In this document: piece after piece, positions 1-9,429 of the stretch
Layout: every line of letters starts with the position of its first letter
Position numbering within the stretch: the first letter of the stretch is position 1
Assembly (NCBI GenBank): GCA_048013815.1
Contig: CM106586.1
Coordinates: 4,092,001-4,156,000, forward strand
Source of the DNA: Setoptus koraiensis
Taxonomy: Eukaryota > Animalia > Arthropoda
DNA length: 64,000 nt
Direction: 5' to 3'
Notes under the pieces: model-generated
What the model was told of the DNA's origin: nothing
The model's database searches: none
What the model saw: the letters and a program-made list of their open reading frames with translations, nothing else
Program-made: the position numbers and the translations under genes

Positions 1-185
1 ATATTGAATGGATTAAATACGGATAGAGCTTTCTCTAGTCAACGAGATATACTAATAATAGAGTATCTGTGAGAGAATACAAAATAACGTTCATCTTGGC
101 TTTGTAACAGAATCATATAATTATATACTATCATATAATATCCATATATAAATCATATTATTAATACAATAATCAAGAGATTCAC

Positions 186-536
186 TCAGAATCCGTGGAC
201 CTTCAACTGGTCTGGTTTGGCAAGATTGATTTTGGTCAAGAATGCACAAATATTATTACGTTGATCTCCCTGCAATTGAATGACTTCGCCGTACTCGGGG
301 TGTTCCACAACTGTCCCGTTGCAAGCAAATTCTTTTTTGCATGCCTTGACAATTTTCTTCTTATCGTAATCGTCACTGATGCCCTGTACGGTGGTCAAAG
401 TTTTACGTCCGCTTCTCTGTTGTATCCTAATATGAATTAAACCGTCCTGTATGCCCTGGTCGTCGGCCTTGTTAGCATCTGCAAATGGGTCATACTTTTT
501 TAAATTTTGAATGCTACCGCCTTCTGGCTCTTTCAT
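186..536 (-). CDS. EIF1: Eukaryotic translation initiation factor 1 (SUI1), intronless, 116 aa, with a 7-aa N-terminal extension
   Basis: Diagnostic eIF1 sequence: SIQNL..DPFADA, IHIRIQQRSGRKTLTTVQGI, KKEFACNGTVVEHPEYGEVIQLQGDQR, C-terminal KVHGF. Confidence 0.98.
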   Translation of the reverse strand: MKEPEGGSIQNLKKYDPFADANKADDQGIQDGLIHIRIQQRSGRKTLTTVQGISDDYDKKKIVKACKKEFACNGTVVEHPEYGEVIQLQGDQRNNICAFLTKINLAKPDQLKVHGF

Positions 537-560
537 GTTTTTTTGGTGATGTAATTAATT

Positions 561-1237
561 ATTATAATTAATAATCAATTATAACAATAGCAGTTATGAG
601 TAATAATAATAAAGATGATCGTGGTGCTTCTAGTGCTAGTGCTAGTGGTGATGGTGGTAGTAATCGCTACAGCACTCTAATAATGACGAAAAAGATAATA
701 AATGTGATAGTAATAATAGTGATAATAATAATAATAATAGTAATAGTAATAATAGTAGTAATAATATATACTATCAAGACCTGATTTGCTTGACGATAAT
801 AAATATAAATTGTATACGTTGTATATATGTTATTGTTGTGTGTATCATGGTTACTTCTCTCTCTCTCTCTCCCTCTTTCTCTCTCTCGCTCTTTTTCCCT
901 CTTTCTCTCTCTACAGTGTGACAGCCATTCAGTGTCCGAAATGTCGATGTGAAAAAAATCCGCTAGGCGCGCTGTTGACTCTGCAAACGCACAACGAAGC
1001 CAGCAGTGTTTTGTTAAATGTTTCTCTTTCTTGATTTCGTGTTATAGCGGGAATAGAGACCAGTAGAAAGAGTAGGCGCGGTTCTTTGACGCGATGCGAG
1101 CATTGCTTGTTGTGCGGTTCGCTATTCTACACCAAGAGCTGTGCTTCTTTTGCAATTCATCGGGAAAGCATAGCAGCGCCGCCCTTGCGGAGTTCTTCGC
1201 GTTAATGTTTAGAACACTGTGGAGTGGGCATATAGTG
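561..1237. repeat. Left arm of a ~680-bp inverted duplication (partner 2677-3369)
   Basis: By-eye alignment to the reverse complement of 2677-3369 gives 6 substitutions (663, 1170, 1186, 1197, 1231, 1233) and a 16-bp difference in the (CT)n tract. Confidence 0.97.
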
Positions 1238-2163
1238 GCTGGTATGCGCATGTGGCCGCTTAGGGTCGTACTAATCTTGTGTACCCTAAAAGATTAGGGT
1301 ACGACTTTAGTGCGGCTAGTTTCTCAAATAGCACTAACCGCTGACTTGGATCGGTACGGCCTTTTGGCGGATTTTTCAAAACGGTCAATAATTTTTCGAT
1401 CGAAACAATCGAAAATAAGCGGCAATTTCGCAAGTACCAACAATCAAAAGAATGTTCAGGTAATAGCGGTGGTTCTTTGTTAATCAAATTTTCATCATTG
1501 CCGGTGATTTCCTCATTGAAAAACGAAGCCTATAAATTGATATTAGAAGACACTTCATTGACGGTCGAAATTTACCCTTCAACTACTATGAAAAGCGATT
1601 TCCCCACCATCATAGCTGATTTTGCGAAGGTTTCGATCTTCACAAAAACGGGCTTGCACAAACCATCTGATTGATTGCAGAGAAAATCTAGCTAAAATTG
1701 ATCCAACCCATCCACTCAAACTGCCGTTTCAGCCGCAAAAATTGGGCTCGAGAATGCACAGTTCAGACCAGAGCCTAGTGCAGCGGTTTTAGGGCGGCTC
1801 TTGGGGTTTGTTCGACTGTGAGAATCAAAAAAGTGCGAGTTGTGAATAATATTGTGCCTACAGTTCTACATGCGAATACTATAGCGGCTATAGTATAGCC
1901 GGCACATCTCTCCGTCTCTCTCTCTCTCTGCCTGTTTCCCTTCACTCATTTATTTATATAGGTGCAACTCATGGATATTAACGGGTATTTTGCGGATATT
2001 CACAGATCATCCGTCACATATTTTTTCGAGGGTTGGGGTCGGGTTTTACCCTAAATTTCCTTCCAAACGGGTCGGGTATCCGTCAAGAATGTCCGTGCCC
2101 ACCTCTAGTCGGTAGCCGTCAGTTCATTCGTTCGCTCACGCATTCGACGACACAACGTGTCAC

Positions 2164-2166
2164 ACA

Positions 2167-2205
<39 letters not shown>
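2164..2205. repeat. (CA)n microsatellite
   Basis: Direct reading. Confidence 0.95.
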
Positions 2206-2208
<3 letters not shown>

Positions 2209-2605
2209 TCTAAAATTCACACAAGCACTGCATACTGACACTGCTTGAAGCGGTTGACGAACGTGTATGTGTGTTTCTCTGTGTGAGTGATAGCATCAGA
2301 GATCAGACAGGATGGAAATATAGGGTGTACCAAATTATCGATCAGGCTATAAAACACACTGTGCTGCACACGAGCACAGGATTCTTCACTATATCCTCCA
2401 TGTGCGGCCTGTACCAGCGCTAATAATGCTTTGTGCGTGCATCTACCAGGCAGGAGTTATAAGCTTCTGCAATTGAATTCATTTACTGGTGGCTGTGCTG
2501 AAGCTTAAACTGTGCATCGGGAGCATTCGGCGTTTATTTTAAAATATGAACTGACGAACATACACACAATAATCAATGCTAGTTGGCAGTTCTGTTTGAT
2601 ACACC

Positions 2606-2616
2606 CTATATAAATA
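2606..2616 (+). promoter_or_regulatory. TATA-like element facing YTHDF, just upstream of the right arm
   Basis: CTATATAAATA. A second CTATAAAA lies at ~2347. Motif match only. Confidence 0.3.
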
Positions 2617-2676
2617 CATGAGTGAAGAGTAAGAGGTAGAGAGAGAGAGAGAAAGAGAGATATAGAAAGAGAGATG

Positions 2677-3038
2677 CACTGTGTGCCCACTCCACAGTGT
2701 TCTAAACATTAACGCGGAGAACTCCGCGAGGGCGGCGCTGCTACGCTTTCCCGATGAATTGCAAAAGAAGCACAGCTCTTGGTGTAGAATAGCGAACCGC
2801 ACAACAAGCAATGCTCGCATCGCGTCAAAGAACCGCGCCTACTCTTTCTACTGGTCTCTATTCCCGCTATAACACGAAATCAAGAAAGAGAAACATTTAA
2901 CAAAACACTGCTGGCTTCGTTGTGCGTTTGCAGAGTCAACAGCGCGCCTAGCGGATTTTTTTCACATCGACATTTCGGACACTGAATGGCTGTCACACTG
3001 TAGAGAGAGAAAGAGGGAAAAAGAGCGAGAGAGAGAAA

Positions 3039-3077
<39 letters not shown>

Positions 3078-3369
3078 AACCATGATACACACAACAATAA
3101 CATATATACAACGTATACAATTTATATTTATTATCGTCAAGCAAATCAGGTCTTGATAGTATATATTATTACTACTATTATTACTATTACTATTATTATT
3201 ATTATTATCACTATTATTACTATCACATTTATTATCTTTTTCGTCATTATTAGAGTGCTGTAGCGAATACTACCACCATCACCACTAGCACTAGCACTAG
3301 AAGCACCACGATCATCTTTATTATTATTACTCATAACTGCTATTGTTATAATTGATTATTAATTATAAT
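2677..3369. repeat. Right arm of the inverted duplication (partner 561-1237)
   Basis: Reverse complement of 561-1237. The ORF track shows mirrored ORFs (596..784 + vs 3146..3334 -; 1094..1297 + vs 2539..2820 -). Confidence 0.97.
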
Positions 3370-3382
3370 TAACAAGTTAGTC

Positions 3383-6300
3383 ATGAAAGATGACCCATCC
3401 TCCTACGACGCCCAATCGTCGTGGACCTCACGGACTTCGCATGCACAAAATGTCTATAATAATTCTAGTGCAGTACAATCATCAAGCAATGCTCGGGCTG
3501 GTCCCCCTCCATCTTCTTCGGCTGCCGCCGCTAATCTAGCTGGACAATATCATCAAATGCAATCTGCCGCAGCGGCAGCTCATAACTATTATCAATCACA
3601 TCTTTATTCTGCTTATCAGGGGCACCCTCCGGATCATCATGCTGCTGTCGCCGCTGCTGTTGCCGCCCAACATGCTCATCAACAATCCAACCCCCAAGCT
3701 ACAGCTACTTTGAATCACGGACCAGCAGGCTGGTCACCAAGTGGTGCACCTCCCCAACCTCATCATGCTGTTGTTACAGACCCCGCACTTGCATACATGG
3801 CTTATCAAAATCACACTACTACTGTCGCCGATCATCATCATCATCGCAACTCTAATGGACCTATGTCGGCGCAATCTTTATCCTCAGGCACAGGGCCTCA
3901 TGCTCCGCCACAGGCTTCGACTTATCCTGTAGATGCTATGTACAGCCAATCGGCAGCCGCTGCGTATGGTTATAATAATTACAATGCCTATTTTCAGCCG
4001 CCTAACAGCGGTCCACATAATCAAGCAGGTCACCCAAATCCGGCTGATGTTGCAACTCATCAATACTGGAATCACTCACAGTCGATAGCACAACAGCGGA
4101 CTGCTCACACTCAAGCGGTGGCCGTGTCAGCTACTGGGGCGACTGTTCAGCAAAGGCCATCCTTGAATAGCGAACAGGCTGCTAATTACTTGCATGACCC
4201 TCGAATGTATTACGGTAGGCCAGCAACAGGGTATCCTCACCAAAGCTTGCAAGCTTTTGGCCAGGCGCAGCATACTCAGCCTCAGCAGCAGCAAACCCAG
4301 CAATCTGAAATTATGCACCACCAAATATCCGCAATGTCGCAGCATCAGATGCAGCAGCACCAACAACAGCAGCAATTGCAGCAACAGCATCAAGTTGCAC
4401 AGGAGCACCAACAAATTCAGCAGCACCAACAACAGCACCAGACTCATCAGCAACATCAGCAACAACATCAACAACATCAGCAACAACATCAGCACCAACA
4501 ACAACAACAGCATCATCATCAGCGGCAGCAGCAACAGCAAATACAATTGCAATTGCACCAACAACAGAAACAACAAGAACAAGAGCAGCAGCAACAGGAG
4601 CAACACAAACACCAAGAGCAACACAAACACCAAGAGCAGCAAAAGCAACAAGAGCAACAGAAACAGCAAGAGCAACAGAATCAGCACGAACAACAGAAAC
4701 AGCAAGAGCAACAGAAACAGCAAGAGCAACAAAAACAAGAGCAACAGAAACAACAAGAGCAACAAAAACAACAGGAGCAACAAAAGCATCAGGAGCAACA
4801 GAAACAGCAAGATCAGCAGAAACAGTTACATCAACAAAAGGAGCAATTGAAACAACAACAAGATCAGCTGAAGCAACAACAAGTGCTCCAACAGCTGACC
4901 CAGCCTACAAGACCGAATTCTCAACAATCAGTGAAACTAGCTCAGAAGTTGCCTCAACTATCAGATCAGGATAATTCTAATAAAGATATAAGACAAAAAT
5001 CCCATGGGTCTACGCAACCTCAGTCTTTTGCTCCGACAATCGATGTCGTTCAGCAATCCCAACAAGATATCAAAAGTGTACCTAGGGTTGATGATCAAGA
5101 GGCAAATAAGGGCAGTAAAATGGATACAAGTATTTCCGCTCCAGGCACTAATGCAACCAAGCAAATACGTGAGATATCTTCGAATAGATCAAATGAACCA
5201 ACTCTAGACGGTCCAAATGTCGAGTTGCGTGAAGACGAGATTTCGCAACCTCAGTCTCTGCCAGCTAGATTGTCTAGCCCCCATCAAGCAACCAGACCGG
5301 TGCGTCAAGAAATCAATAGAAATCCTCCTCAACAATCTCATCAGCCGACTTTTTCTAGAAATCGAAACCATGTCAATGCTCAGGGAAGCATATTGGGCCC
5401 TATTGCTGGTAATACCAACTCTAATAGCCTTAGTAGCCCCAACAATTCGAAAGAGAGAGGAGCGAATAGGCCGTATGAGTCGACGTCATTCAATCGTCAG
5501 CAAACGCAGCCTGAGCCATATAACTCCAACAAACAGGACAAAAATTCTGTCATGGCCACTAAAACTGACATCTCATCCAACCTTAGTTCCATGAATATAA
5601 GCGTACCGCGCAAGACAACTTGGGCTTCAATAGCTGGTCAGCCTGCCAAAATGGCGCAGCCGAAGTCTTTGAAATCTAAAATAGCTGCTTCTAACTCAGT
5701 GCTTTCATCTGCAAAACATTTGGCCGCTGCTGCCATCGATTCGGTAGGACTCGACTCTAAAAATGGAATCAACCCAGCTATCAAGAATAGCGTCACCGCC
5801 GCAACAACTGTATCACGTCCATCTCTTCCACCGGTTGTGATGAATACAACTGTTGTCGTAAATAAAGAGACTGAAGCGGGGTCTTTGGGACCTTATGCAG
5901 ATTCTGTTGCGTCCAACATTTCTTGGCCAGCTGTGTCTGCGTCTATGGAGCAATCACAGAACTCATCACAGTCATCTGCTCAGTTCAATGCCTCAATCAG
6001 AAACGCTGCTTTTGGGCCGAACACAAGAAAAACGCCACCCACAACAGCTTCGGTAGTTGCTGGAAATTCCGGCTCTTATAACGCAACGATCAATTCAGCA
6101 ATTGGTACTACATCAAGCCAATTGAGAGGCTCCGACAATAACAAAGAGCTTGTTAAACGGAACAAAAATAGTGAACCTAGTAGCTACCACGATTTTCGTC
6201 GTGAGCAATCTGGTCCGAGAGATTTCTCTAGGAGTGATGATCGAACTTACAAAATCCTTCCGCATCGTGATCGTCAAACTAGGACTGACGCGGGTGATGG

Positions 6301-7789
6301 CCTACGTGATAGCATTTCTTCTGGAAAGAGTGGTGATTCCGGCCCCCTCCAAAGTCATGGAGTTAATAGACGCGATTCTGCTGAGGGACAAAGTGAAGTT
6401 GGGGACTCTTTACCCAAAACAAATGTAGGTGATTCGCGGCGGCTCGACGTGCGCGATTTGCGTGAACTAAAACAAACCAGTGAACTTGAGAGGCCATCTA
6501 TTAGTATTCAAAATCGTAATGATGATAGGTCCAAAGATATGGAATATATTGAGCCACGTGACTTCAGAAATCTCAGAACTGGCCCAAGGGATCACAATGA
6601 TAATCATGGGACAACTCTAAAATCTGGTTCTTACAACAAGTCTGTCACAAGTGATAGAGATTGGGATGGTGAAGGAAGGGATCAACATCATTATAGAGAA
6701 CCAAGAAGGGATGTACGCAATGATTACAATGCACCTCGCGACTTCAGATCTGGACCCGTGCGAAGTATTCAGTATCGTGACGATCAACATCACGATAGGG
6801 ATTACCCTAGCAATCGAATAAATTCTGATAGAAACAATGATGGTTACAATAACTCTAGGCACCCAAATAATAGAGTAGATCAAAAGAGAGACTACCATAC
6901 GTCTTCACACCACAATAGAAATGATTCATCGTTACCCGCAGGAGGGCCTCAGAATCATCACTACAACAGCGTGAGAGACGGGATTAGCGCGAGTAGCAAA
7001 TTACCACCAGCTATACTGTCATCTTACCCTCATTTGAATCCGATCAATTTCAATCCAGTGGAACTTGATCTCAATCCGAAGAACGCTAGATATTTCATCA
7101 TTAAATCTTACAGCGAAGATGATATACATCGATCTATCAAATATTCTATTTGGTGCTCAACCGAACGCGGCAATGAGCGTCTCGATGACGCCTATCGTGA
7201 GCAAAAAGCCAAGGCTGGTTCTGTTTTTTTGTACTTTTCTGTTAATGGTTCTGGACATTTCTGTGGTATGGCAAGAATGATGTCACCTGTAGATTTTAAT
7301 TCTTCTTCTGGTGTATGGGCACAAAGTAAATGGAAGGGAGAATTCAAAGTTAACTGGATATTCATTAAGGATGTTCCAAACAGTCAATTGCGTCACATAA
7401 AATTAGAGAATAATGAAAACAAACCAGTCACAAATTCCCGTGACACCCAAGAGGTTCCTAGTGAGAAAGGCAAAGCTGTTATGAAGATAATTCACCAATA
7501 TCAGCATTCGACATCTATTTTTGATGATTTTCCACATTATGAAAAACGCCAAGAAGTAGAAAGCTTGAGGAAAGCTGCACCTCAGCAGTCCATAAGTTCT
7601 TTGGCAACAACGAAGCCTCCCCCTCTCGTCATTTCATCATCAAATGTTGGTCAACAAAAGAATAACATGCATATTTCTAAAAGTAGTAACCCTATATCTT
7701 ATACAAGGGATTCTTCATTATCTCATAGAGATTCTATCATTTCAAGAGAGCGATCGAGTGGCAATTGGAATTCGTCCAGTAGGTATTAA
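3383..7789 (+). CDS. YTHDF: YTH domain family m6A reader (YTHDF-type), intronless, 1468 aa
   Basis: C-terminal YTH domain (~7085-7500): [70 protein letters not shown]. All three cage tryptophans are present. RKTTWASIA matches the conserved YTHDF mid-region motif. Long Q/H/P/Y-rich N-terminus. Confidence 0.96.
4270..4890 (+). repeat. Coding polyQ/QH tract with an 18-nt (QQKQQE-type) tandem unit at ~4600-4830
   Basis: Direct reading of DNA and translation. Confidence 0.9.
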
Positions 7790-8131: not shown

Positions 8132-9142
8132 TCAAGCAAAGTTTAATCGTTTTGCCACAGGTCCAACGGGGTCCGGATGAGGCCTTTTTGATGCAGTGGA
8201 TCTCTTTTCTATTTCGTCTTTGATTTCTTTAGGTAATGGTAATGACTCTGGGGGTGTTGGATATGGTTTATTGATGAAGTATGGCATTTTCAAAGCCTTT
8301 GTACAATCGCATCTATTCAATGGATATAACATAAGCATACTAGTCAGAAGATCGATAGCATCTTCGCCTATTGCCGTGAAAATTTCTCTGAGAGGTATTC
8401 CATTTTGAGGCATCCGAAATGCTACGTAATCGGGAAGATGTTTGACGCCTGGCCAGTTGGTATCATTTGGAGTTCCTAAGACTGACATGATCTTCTCTAA
8501 TTGCTCTAAATCTGACTCACCTGGCAAAAACGGTGCCCTGAGAAATAGTTCGGCTAGAATACAACCTACAGCCCAAATGTCCACTCCAGTGCCATACATT
8601 CTGGCACCGAACAACAGTTCTGGTGCACGATACCATCTAGTTACAACCTGATGAGTGTATATCCGTGTTGGTGATCCGAATGAGCGCGCAAGACCGAAAT
8701 CGGCAATTTTAAGAATATTATTACTATTAAGCAGTAAATTGTTTGGTTTGAGATCACGATGCAATATCCAATTGAGATGTAAGTATTCTAAGCCTTTTAG
8801 AGTCATTAATATATAAGACTTAATATGAGCTGGAGTGAGAACAATACTGTTGTCTCTGATTATAACCTCTAGATCTGTCTCCATGAATTCGAACACTAGA
8901 GATACACTAGACCTATGTCCATAGACGTCTAGTAAGGCTATGATATTTTCATGGCTGAGCTCCTGTAGTAGTTTGACCTCTCTCAAGGCAGTTCTATTGA
9001 CACCATCACGTGCTTCGTGCCGAGTGCCTAACTTGATCTTCTTTATTGCAACCAGGCTATCCGTTTCGGTATCCCTAGCTTTGTATACCCTAGCAAACTG
9101 ACCCTCCCCAATATATCCATCTTTGGCGTACCTAGAAGACAT
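8132..9142 (-). CDS. CDK7: Cyclin-dependent kinase 7 (CAK catalytic subunit), intronless, 336 aa from MSSRY
   Basis: GEGQFA P-loop, NRTALRE helix, [20 protein letters not shown]-loop [19 protein letters not shown]. Similarity starts at the Met at 9142; the upstream 48 codons of the track ORF are not kinase-like. Confidence 0.96.
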
Positions 9143-9429
9143 GATGTATTGATTGCTAAAATAATATATGCTCTGACAATGAAGAGAATACCTTCTAAAA
9201 GAATAAATAAATTTTATTTTGAACTGCGATAATTTTCTCTTTGATACACTTGTAATGCCAACTAGCACACTATCAATGAGCGGCAAATTTGAACACGTTT
9301 ATTCTAAAAAAGTGAAAAAATGGATTGTCCGACAGTGCCCCCTCTAGAATACCTTTGGATCGAAAACTCTCTCACGAACTGACCAGTAAAATAGAATACG
9401 GCTTTCGTGCATTCGATCGAGCCCGACTA

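What the first reader, a model, noticed from the sequence alone, without database searches (positions are those of the whole stretch)
536..3383. eIF1 and YTHDF share a copied ~680-bp leader/promoter as an inverted repeat around a potentially invertible 1.44-kb spacer
Seen: 561-1237 and 2677-3369 are near-identical inverted arms. Their outer ends lie 24 bp from the eIF1 ATG and 13 bp from the YTHDF ATG, so both divergent genes are preceded by essentially the same sequence in sense orientation. Established: eIF1 sets start-codon stringency and YTHDF proteins read m6A on mRNA; long near-identical inverted repeats are recombination substrates. Inference: (a) the two translation regulators are co-regulated through a duplicated promoter/5' UTR; (b) crossover between the arms would flip the spacer 1238-2676, whose TATA-like boxes (~2347, 2606) face one way, making a possible orientation switch or polymorphism; (c) if both transcripts include the arm, they carry the same leader. 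A transposon with long terminal repeats fits poorly, because removing it would leave two ATGs about 40 bp apart.
Basis: partly seen in the sequence, partly recalled or inferred. Interest (0 to 1): 0.85.

Follow-up and report, generated by a model that had tools for sequence, protein, structure and literature searches.

The report
Mirror-copied promoter region between two genes
Two unrelated genes that control translation (eIF1 and a YTHDF-type m6A reader) sit head-to-head in a mite-like genome and are each preceded by the same ~0.68-kb sequence, a real two-copy inverted duplication made by a local rearrangement and apparently kept identical by gene conversion; whether it makes the genes co-regulated or flips is untested.

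Summary
Window 561-1237 and 2677-3369 are inverted copies (677 and 693 nt). They differ by 6 substitutions and one 16-nt (TC)8 indel, and end 24 nt and 13 nt from the start codons of eIF1/SUI1 (186-536, minus) and a YTHDF-type gene (3383-7789, plus).

Contigs from a public run show the eIF1-arm, arm-spacer and arm-YTH junctions. Arm depth is about twice that of the flanks and the spacer is single-copy. So this is neither an assembly artefact nor a multi-copy transposon.

New points:
- The palindrome once reached further in. A remnant (1905-1962 / 2605-2663) is only 85-88% identical and is cut off on the left by a 667-nt indel (1238-1904).
- Five of the six arm differences lie at the inner edge, an identity gradient typical of gene conversion.
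- In eight to eleven related contigs eIF1 never neighbours YTH, so the adjacency is a lineage-specific local rearrangement.
- eIF1 has a derived N-terminus (MKEP...) resembling the native YTH start (MKDDP...). This hints that YTH's leader and start were copied onto eIF1.

No RNA data could be obtained. Shared promoter or leader use stays inferred, and spacer flipping stays untested.

This is a new variant of a known kind, of moderate interest.

The parts
186..536 (-). eIF1/SUI1 coding sequence, single exon, 116 aa. Its N-terminus MKEPEGG is derived compared with relatives (MS.IQNL).
   Evidence: ORF; Pfam SUI1; relatives' N-termini
537..560 (-). 24-nt eIF1-specific stretch between the start codon and the arm. 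It cannot be aligned with the YTH side.
561..1237 (-). Left arm (677 nt), in sense orientation for eIF1. The outer ~340 nt are AT-rich with (TAA)n and (TC)n; the inner ~335 nt have about 47% GC.
   Evidence: X1 contigs 345-590 and 903-1230 at about 2x depth
1238..1904 (.). 667-nt segment present only on the left side: an insertion into the left arm or a deletion from the right. It is single-copy, has no clean TSD, and has only a weak 14-nt terminal inverted match (1242-1255 / 1867-1880).
   Evidence: alignment; fold; depth 128; no Pfam
1905..1962 (-). Inner remnant of the left arm, 85-88% identical to 2605-2663. It holds a TATA-like box (1960-1951, minus strand) facing eIF1.
1963..2604 (.). 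Unique central core of the palindrome (642 nt), with a (CA)n microsatellite at 2160-2205 and a TATA-like box at 2348 (+).
   Evidence: single-copy depth
2605..2676 (+). Inner remnant of the right arm, with a TATA-like box at 2607-2616 (+) facing YTH and a (GA)n tract. It runs straight into the right arm.
2677..3369 (+). Right arm (693 nt), in sense orientation for YTH.
   Evidence: X1 contigs 3227-3369 (depth 230) and 3340-4200
3085..3382 (+). ATG-free sense zone: a candidate shared 5' leader with a sense TATA-like box at 3160. The mirror zone on the eIF1 side is 537-847, with its box at 770 (minus strand).
   Evidence: 0 ATG against 3.3 expected, P = 0.026; 6 ATG on the antisense strand
3370..3382 (+). 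13-nt YTH-specific stretch between the arm and the start codon.
3383..7789 (+). YTHDF-type m6A-reader gene, single exon, 1468 aa. It has a long Q-rich N-terminal region and a YTH domain at residues 1235-1371. Its start, MKDDPSSYD, is conserved in relatives.
8132..9286 (-). CDK7-like kinase, used as a synteny marker. In relatives it lies just beyond the LRR gene downstream of eIF1; here it lies beyond YTH, on the upstream side of eIF1.

Best explanation
This is a genuine two-copy inverted segmental duplication (a small palindrome) of the 5'-flanking region, lying between head-to-head eIF1 and YTHDF genes.

A local rearrangement specific to this lineage brought the two genes together. In that event, about 0.74 kb of one gene's upstream region was copied in inverted orientation in front of the other. 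The donor was probably YTHDF, and the copy may have included the start codon. The mechanism would be a staggered-break micro-inversion or a fold-back/template-switch repair.

Later, a 667-nt indel split the left arm. Outside that indel the arms are kept over 99% identical by intrachromosomal gene conversion. Inside it the remnant has drifted to 85-88%.

Consequence (inferred): in a genome whose divergent promoters fit into about 0.3 kb, both genes now use the same proximal promoter and the same uATG-free leader. Only the last 13-24 nt, the start-codon context, are gene-specific. Recombination between the arms can invert the spacer, but this is probably neutral.

Shown: the structure, the copy number, the identity gradient, the non-conserved adjacency, and the derived eIF1 N-terminus. 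Inferred: the mechanism of origin, the conversion, and the promoter and leader use.
For: Structure.

Real and two-copy: X1 contigs cover the unique junctions 345-590, 1201-2154 and 3340-4200. They break about 30 nt into each arm. Depths are 230-282 for the arms against 101-181 for the flanks and 128-140 for the spacer.

Rearrangement: in L002-L009 the order is eIF1(+) LRR(-) CDK7(+). L010-L012 show eIF1(+) LRR(-) followed by a different kinase. The genes upstream of eIF1 vary and are never YTH. Here CDK7 stays within 8 kb but on the other side, behind YTH.

Conversion-like pattern:
- There are 6 differences in 677 nt in the arms against 5 in 33 in the non-microsatellite part of the inner remnant (Fisher p = 6e-5), and 5 of the 6 arm differences lie in the innermost 68 nt.
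- A second sample (L001) is 2.3% diverged in the eIF1 CDS, all synonymous. It differs by 13% from our arm in the outer 47 nt, where our two arms are identical. Its contig ends 48 nt into the arm, as expected at a repeat.

Donor hint: YTH orthologues start MKDT..SYD and eIF1 relatives start MS.IQNL. Here eIF1 starts MKEP and shares ATGAAAGA(n)CCA with YTH.

Promoter plausibility: the ATG-free 298 nt and sense TATA-like box; LRR-CDK7 divergent spacers of 233-412 nt in relatives against 2846 nt here.

Mechanistic precedent: inverted duplications of 46 bp to 1.9 kb of non-repetitive DNA at 59% of Drosophila inversion breakpoints (PMC1885836); fold-back priming (PMC10622511).
Against: - No transcript data: the RNA runs laid gave zero reads. 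Start sites, shared leader use and co-regulation are unproven.
- Physical linkage of the two halves across the (CA)n tract at 2155-2216, and the spacer orientation, rest on the assembly alone.
- The high arm identity could simply mean a very recent duplication rather than conversion. The other arm of the L001 sample could not be recovered.
- The 13-24 nt next to the ATGs cannot be aligned. This sits awkwardly with a duplication that included the start codon, and ATGAAAGA could be chance (roughly 1%).
- In the classical staggered-break model the copies flank the whole inverted segment. Here that segment would be only non-coding DNA, so it does not by itself explain the gene-order change.
- A third partial copy of the inner arm (about 80 nt) exists elsewhere in X1 and is unexplained.
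Confidence: 0.6

Rival explanations
1. The arms and spacer form an orientation switch or polymorphism. Recombination between the arms flips 1238-2676. This exchanges which gene lies next to the close TATA box (2607) and which lies behind the 667-nt insert, and so changes expression of eIF1 and YTHDF.
For: The arms are 677-693 nt and over 99% identical, an adequate substrate for non-allelic homologous recombination. Human inversions between inverted repeats are recurrent (PMC3961182, listed). The spacer is asymmetric: the 667-nt segment is on one side only and the TATA-like boxes are placed unequally.
Against: No read evidence exists for a second orientation, because k=31 contigs cannot span the arms. 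The spacer has no gene, Pfam domain or Rfam RNA. Transcripts from the 2607 box would carry 6 upstream ATGs, so these boxes are unlikely to be the working promoters. The arms themselves do not move on inversion, so the proximal 0.68 kb of both genes is unchanged.
Confidence: 0.1
2. The unit is a non-autonomous DNA transposon with long terminal inverted repeats (Foldback-like or a long-TIR MITE), inserted between the two genes.
For: Long terminal inverted repeats enclose an unrelated core. The arms contain simple-sequence tracts. A partial third copy of about 80 nt of the inner arm exists elsewhere in the genome.
Against: Arm depth is only about 2x and the core is 1x. There is no other copy in 64 kb, no target-site duplication at 560/561 and 3369/3370, and no transposase-like ORF. 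Excision would leave the two ATGs 37 nt apart with no promoter for either gene. The arms lack the tandem sub-repeat structure of Foldback elements.
Confidence: 0.07
3. It is an assembly artefact: a collapsed or chimeric join, or an unsplit or chimeric long read producing a false palindrome.
For: An earlier, unchecked scan note reports an unsplit-PacBio-read palindrome elsewhere in this assembly (s1-321323). X1 may be the same sample as the assembly, so it may not be independent. Continuity across the (CA)n tract at 2155-2216 and the (GA)n tract at 2623-2674 is not covered by contigs.
Against: - The arms are flanked by two different genes, and both unique outer junctions and the left inner junction are present in k-mer contigs, with 2x arm depth.
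- Six runs under two organism labels hold 55-88% of the words.
- The arms differ by an indel and 6 substitutions, and the centre is asymmetric, unlike a read folded on itself.
- eIF1 and CDK7 stay neighbours as in relatives.
- A different sample (L001) also carries arm sequence next to eIF1.
Confidence: 0.05
4. It is a neutral, very recent inverted duplication with no role in expression. The working promoters lie elsewhere, and the identity reflects youth rather than conversion.
For: No expression data are available. Inverted duplications at breakpoints are usually by-products (PMC1885836).
Against: With only 13 and 24 nt of private sequence before each ATG, at least one gene must draw its promoter from an arm or from the spacer beyond it. 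The inner remnant at 85-88% identity shows the duplication is not very young. eIF1's derived start and its adjoining arm sequence are already shared with a sample about 2-3% diverged, although that sample's second arm was not recovered.
Confidence: 0.15

Closest known systems
Inverted duplications at inversion breakpoints (staggered-break model; Ranz et al. 2007, PMC1885836)
   Same: Non-repetitive DNA of a few hundred bp is duplicated in inverted orientation (46 bp to 1.9 kb in Drosophila). It lies where gene order differs from relatives, and no transposon is involved.
   Different: The copies here lie only 1.4 kb apart around non-coding DNA. They are over 99% identical, against about 88% on average in Drosophila. 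They abut the start codons of two unrelated genes. The inversion they would delimit does not explain the change in gene order.
Arm-to-arm gene conversion in palindromes (for example human Y-chromosome palindromes P1-P8; from my own knowledge, not tested here)
   Same: Near-identical inverted arms surround a unique spacer. Identity decays at the arm boundary, and the arms are more alike within a genome than between close relatives.
   Different: The scale is 0.7 kb rather than 9 kb to 1.4 Mb. The arms hold promoter and leader sequence rather than whole genes. Conversion is inferred from pattern only.
Fold-back inversions / inverted duplication by fold-back priming (PMC10622511)
   Same: The product is an inverted duplication with a short unique spacer, formed during break repair or replication.
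   Different: Those events are usually large, terminal and unstable. Here the duplication is small, internal and fixed between two intact genes.
Inversion polymorphisms mediated by inverted repeats (PMC3961182)
   Same: The inverted arms flank a segment that can flip by homologous recombination.
   Different: No second orientation has been observed here, and the segment holds no gene.
Bidirectional promoters of head-to-head gene pairs (PMC2688522)
   Same: Two divergent genes are probably co-regulated from the DNA between them.
   Different: This is not one shared promoter but two mirror copies 1.4 kb apart. The intergenic distance (2846 nt) is about 9 times the divergent spacers seen in relatives.
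Foldback / long-TIR DNA transposons
   Same: Long terminal inverted repeats surround an unrelated core.
   Different: Only one unit is present (arms at 2x depth). There is no target-site duplication, no tandem sub-repeats and no transposase.

Membership tests
Inverted segmental duplication at a rearrangement breakpoint | Two copies only, in inverted orientation, of otherwise unique sequence | tested here: met
   blastn. X1 word depth is 230-282 in the arms against 101-181 in the flanks.
Inverted segmental duplication at a rearrangement breakpoint | Lies at a point where gene order differs from related genomes | tested here: met
   Relatives L002-L009 show eIF1-LRR-CDK7, L010-L012 show eIF1-LRR followed by a different kinase, and none has YTH upstream of eIF1. 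Here CDK7 lies beyond YTH on the upstream side.
Inverted segmental duplication at a rearrangement breakpoint | The copies delimit the inverted segment, and the ancestral single-copy state is identified in an outgroup | tested here: inconclusive
   No non-coding similarity to relatives was found. The ancestral arrangement could not be reconstructed, and the YTH-side contigs of close relatives were not recovered.
Gene-conversion-maintained palindrome | Arm-to-arm identity far above that of neighbouring homologous sequence, with decay at the boundaries | tested here: met
   99.1% in the arms against 85-88% in the inner remnant, Fisher p = 6e-5. Five of the six differences lie in the innermost 68 nt.
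Gene-conversion-maintained palindrome | Concerted evolution: the arms within a genome are closer to each other than to their orthologues | tested here: inconclusive
   Our arms are identical over the outer 47 nt, where L001 differs by 13%. Only one arm of L001 is available, and only 47 nt of it.
Long-TIR / Foldback DNA transposon | Multiple genomic copies | tested here: not met
   Arms at 2x and core at 1x depth; no other copy in the window. Only an 80-nt partial third match was seen.
Long-TIR / Foldback DNA transposon | Target-site duplication flanking the termini | tested here: not met
   The flanks at 548-560 and 3370-3382 share no direct repeat.
Long-TIR / Foldback DNA transposon | Transposase ORF, or tandem sub-repeats in the TIRs | tested here: not met
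   Pfam gives nothing below E 1e-3 except low-complexity hits. The arms hold only microsatellites.
Invertible (flip-flop) segment | Both orientations present in a population or in reads | not testable with these tools
   Only k=31 contigs were available, and the arms are longer than k.
Shared promoter / 5' leader | Transcription start sites of both genes inside the arms | not testable with these tools
Indirect support only: the ATG-free 298 nt and a sense TATA-like box.

The most novel reading that the evidence does not exclude
In this intron-poor, strongly rearranged mite genome, breaks that fall right at start codons are survived because repair copies the neighbour's promoter, leader and even its first codons in mirror image. 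This creates head-to-head pairs of unrelated genes that run on identical, conversion-maintained promoter copies.

The eIF1-YTHDF pair would be one instance of a recurrent, genome-wide process. It would be a notable one, because it would link the factor that sets start-codon stringency to an m6A reader through one shared leader and a chimeric eIF1 start. Earlier unchecked notes list at least five similar loci in the same genome.
Probability: 0.25. Interest if true: 0.7.

Novelty: new variant of a known kind. Interest (0 to 1): 0.42.

Why it matters
If the arms are the working promoters and leaders, a core translation-initiation factor and an m6A reader are transcribed and scanned from identical sequence. 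Only the last 13-24 nt set their start-codon context. That would be a natural experiment in promoter and leader sharing, and in how eIF1's self-regulating start context is rebuilt after a rearrangement.

More generally, it would show how a very compact genome with little conserved gene order can tolerate breakpoints inside tiny intergenic regions: by duplicating the promoter in mirror image. Gene conversion would then hold the two genes' regulation together.

If the arms are not used, this is an ordinary by-product of a micro-rearrangement.

Tried and rejected
- RNA evidence. Read laying with two 2026 poly(A)/oligo-dT runs carrying the label of 'organism C' gave zero reads, and the X8 contigs of that label hold only a 268-nt piece of the eIF1 CDS. 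The label is probably a host or a mixed sample, so this is no test.
- Recovering the YTH-side arm from other samples. The exact YTH protein is not on record. A search with the first 330 residues gave nothing. Junction-spanning ORFs are not on record.
- Donor polarity from non-coding conservation. Sensitive blastn of both leaders against 2 kb upstream of eIF1 in 9 relatives and of YTH in 3 relatives gave no hit.
- Two metagenome scans with arm 25- and 30-mers were blank.
- Rfam on 1-6000 gave only chance microsatellite hits. Pfam on the spacer and arm ORFs gave nothing credible.
- The 667-nt segment as a MITE. It has only a weak, off-set 14-nt terminal inverted match, no target-site duplication and single-copy depth, so this was not adopted.
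- YTH synteny. L013 shows kinase-COX5A-YTH, but that kinase is a different CDK (35-38% identity) and the 239-aa neighbour is not the LRR gene, so nothing was built on it.
- A hairpin-RNA locus was considered and rejected. Both flanking genes point outward, so no evident transcript crosses both arms.

Full report
**1. Observation**

The repeat finder reports arms 856-1237/2677-3058 (99%) and 542-908/3022-3388 (95%); these two pieces are offset only by a microsatellite length difference. blastn joins them into one match, 561-1237 against 3369-2677, at 96.8% over 693 columns. It is the only long repeat in the 64-kb window. A global alignment gives 677 against 693 nt, six substitutions and one 16-nt (TC)8 indel.

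The flanking ORFs are:
- eIF1/SUI1 at 186-536 on the minus strand (Pfam SUI1, E 2e-27).
- A 1468-aa protein at 3383-7789 on the plus strand, with a C-terminal YTH domain (E 6e-51).

The YTH domain matches solved YTHDF1-3 structures at E about 1e-80, against 1e-14 for YTHDC1, so 'YTHDF' is right. The arms stop 24 nt and 13 nt from the two ATGs, and those stubs cannot be aligned with each other.

**2. Is it an artefact or a transposon?**

Logan contigs of run X1 contain the unique junctions:
- eIF1 to arm (345-590)
- arm to spacer (1201-2154)
- arm to YTH (3340-4200)

Each contig stops about 30 nt inside an arm, as a k=31 graph must at a repeat. Word depth is 230-282 in the arms, 101-181 in the flanks and 128-140 in the spacer. 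So the arm sequence exists twice, once beside each gene, and the spacer exists once.

Six runs under two organism labels hold 55-88% of the words. A contig from a different sample (L001) has an eIF1 CDS that is 2.3% diverged with all changes synonymous. It also carries arm sequence next to eIF1 and ends 48 nt into it.

Several results argue against a long-TIR or Foldback transposon:
- No target-site duplication and no further copy.
- No transposase-like ORF and no Rfam family.
- Removing the unit would leave the ATGs 37 nt apart.

Two things rest on the assembly alone: continuity across the (CA)n tract at 2155-2216, and the spacer's orientation. However, eIF1 and the CDK7-like kinase (8132-9286) remain neighbours as in relatives. 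This speaks against a misjoin.

**3.

The palindrome continues inward. Positions 1905-1962 pair with 2663-2605 at 88% (85% outside the CT microsatellite). They are collinear with the arms, but on the left side they are separated from the arm by 667 nt (1238-1904). On the right side the two parts are contiguous. So the original arms were about 0.74 kb around a 642-nt core (1963-2604), and an indel later split the left arm.

That 667-nt segment is single-copy. It has only a weak, off-set 14-nt terminal inverted match and no target-site duplication.

Identity is two-tiered:
- 6 differences in 677 nt in the arms, against 5 in 33 in the non-microsatellite part of the remnant (Fisher p = 6e-5).
- Five of the six arm differences lie in the innermost 68 nt, and all five are transitions.

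The conserved heart of the remnant is a TATA-like box with about 12 nt downstream. It lies at 2607-2616 (+) facing YTH, and at 1960-1951 (-) facing eIF1.

**4. Context in relatives**

The closest named eIF1 sequences are from acariform mites and ticks. The genes here are intronless and the genome has at least two large pieces. This fits an intron-poor mite such as an eriophyoid (PMC7738191, PMC11879100). That is an inference; the organism was not identified.

In eight contigs carrying a 94%-identical eIF1, the order is eIF1(+) LRR(-) CDK7(+). In three contigs carrying a 90%-identical eIF1, the order is eIF1(+) LRR(-) followed by a different kinase. The genes upstream of eIF1 vary (a GPCR, a short-chain dehydrogenase, eIF3h) and are never YTH. 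In the window, read in eIF1 sense, the order is CDK7(+) YTH(-) [palindrome] eIF1(+) LRR(-). The eIF1-YTH adjacency is therefore a local rearrangement specific to this lineage, with a breakpoint immediately upstream of eIF1.

Divergent LRR-CDK7 spacers in the relatives measure 233-412 nt. A 677-nt arm can thus hold a complete promoter plus leader. Reported eriophyoid genomes show very little conserved gene order (10.64898/2026.08.24.746826).

**5. Which gene gave the sequence?**

No non-coding similarity to relatives survives. The coding ends give a hint:
- YTH orthologues start MKDT..SYD, like MKDDPSSYD here, so the YTH start is native.
- eIF1 relatives start MS(N/G)IQNL.
- eIF1 here and in L001 starts MKEPEGGSIQNL.
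- The two genes here share ATGAAAGA and, after a 3-nt gap, CCA.

This suggests that the YTH leader, start codon and first few codons were copied onto eIF1, and that the edge next to the ATG later decayed or was reshaped. I put this at about 35%. The unalignable 13-24 nt stubs and a chance probability near 1% keep it a lead.

**6. How it most likely works**

*Origin (inferred).* An inverted duplication arose during break repair, either by staggered breaks or by fold-back/template switching. Staggered breaks leave inverted copies of 46 bp to 1.9 kb at 59% of Drosophila inversion breakpoints (PMC1885836). Fold-back priming is described in PMC10622511.

*Maintenance (inferred from pattern).* Arm-to-arm gene conversion up to the heterology at 1237/1238. 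Three observations fit:
- The identity gradient (section 3).
- Our arms are identical where L001 differs by 13%, although the flanks differ by only 2.3%.
- In X1 the inner 328 nt of both arms collapse into one contig at 2x depth.

*Function (inferred).* Both genes take their proximal promoter and leader from the arms.
- The last 298 nt of each arm have no ATG in sense orientation. Shuffles expect 3.3 (P = 0.026), and the antisense strand has six.
- These 298 nt hold a sense TATA-like box 223-234 nt before the ATGs.
- A transcript from the 2607 box would carry six upstream ATGs.

*Flipping.* Inversion of the spacer by recombination is expected from the arm length and identity (compare PMC3961182). 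It would leave the proximal 0.68 kb of both genes unchanged, so I rate a regulatory switch at about 10%.

**7. What could not be done**

No transcript evidence was obtained. The only raw RNA runs offered belong to a label whose DNA contigs hold just a fragment of eIF1, and they gave zero reads. The YTH-side arm of the L001 sample could not be fetched. Metagenome scans were blank.

One point remains unexplained. A single-copy-depth contig in X1 joins arm positions about 940-985 to 1158-1191 and runs into unrelated DNA on both sides. This is a third, partial copy somewhere else in the genome.

**8. Verdict**

- The transposon rejection is right.
- A shared promoter and leader is plausible but untested.
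- The switch idea is weak.

The closest known things are breakpoint-associated inverted duplications and conversion-maintained palindromes. This is a small variant of those, in which the arms are the 5' flanks of two unrelated translation-control genes.

Earlier unchecked notes from the same genome describe at least five similar 'promoter capture by inverted duplication' loci. If that recurrence is real, the phenomenon is worth more than this single case. Interest 0.42.

Noticed in passing
window 186-536 (minus strand), first 12 codons; L001:72-110: eIF1 here and in sample L001 starts MKEPEGGSIQNL, whereas all close relatives start MS(N/G)IQNL. The new start shares ATGAAAGA(n)CCA with the neighbouring YTH gene (MKDDP), whose own start is conserved in relatives. 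It may be a chimeric start codon.
   Followed up: partly
window ~940-985 and ~1158-1191 (arm), seen in run X1: A contig at single-copy depth (167) joins these two arm blocks directly and continues into unrelated sequence on both sides. This is a third, partial copy of the GC-rich inner arm elsewhere in the genome.
   Followed up: no
window 1170, 1186, 1197, 1231, 1233 vs 2744, 2728, 2717, 2683, 2681: All five inner-edge differences between the arms are transitions, with A or T in the left arm and G or C in the right. In X1 the stretch 903-1230 forms one contig at 2x depth that matches the left-arm version except at 1173. Some window differences may therefore be allelic or polishing effects.
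   Followed up: partly
window 8132-9286 and L002-L009: The conserved trio eIF1-LRR-CDK7 of relatives is broken here. CDK7 lies beyond YTH on the upstream side of eIF1, still within 8 kb, which indicates a very local block move or nested inversions.
   Followed up: partly
window 4300-4900: The YTHDF N-terminal region holds about 200 residues of Q/H/E/K repeats (QQEQQK-like units). A CAG/CAA-rich tract at about 43.83-44.0 kb cross-matches it at 70-73%.
   Followed up: no
window 547-588 and 3342-3368: The outer boundary of each arm lies in a short AT-rich, self-complementary stretch (31-40 nt, 75-84% self-pairing). This may be a fragile or hairpin-prone site at the duplication edge.
   Followed up: no
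runs X7-X11, X29-X34 ('organism C'): DNA contigs of this label hold only a fragment of the eIF1 CDS with an Illumina adapter at its end, and its RNA runs hold nothing. The label is probably a host or a mixed sample rather than the mite.
   Followed up: partly
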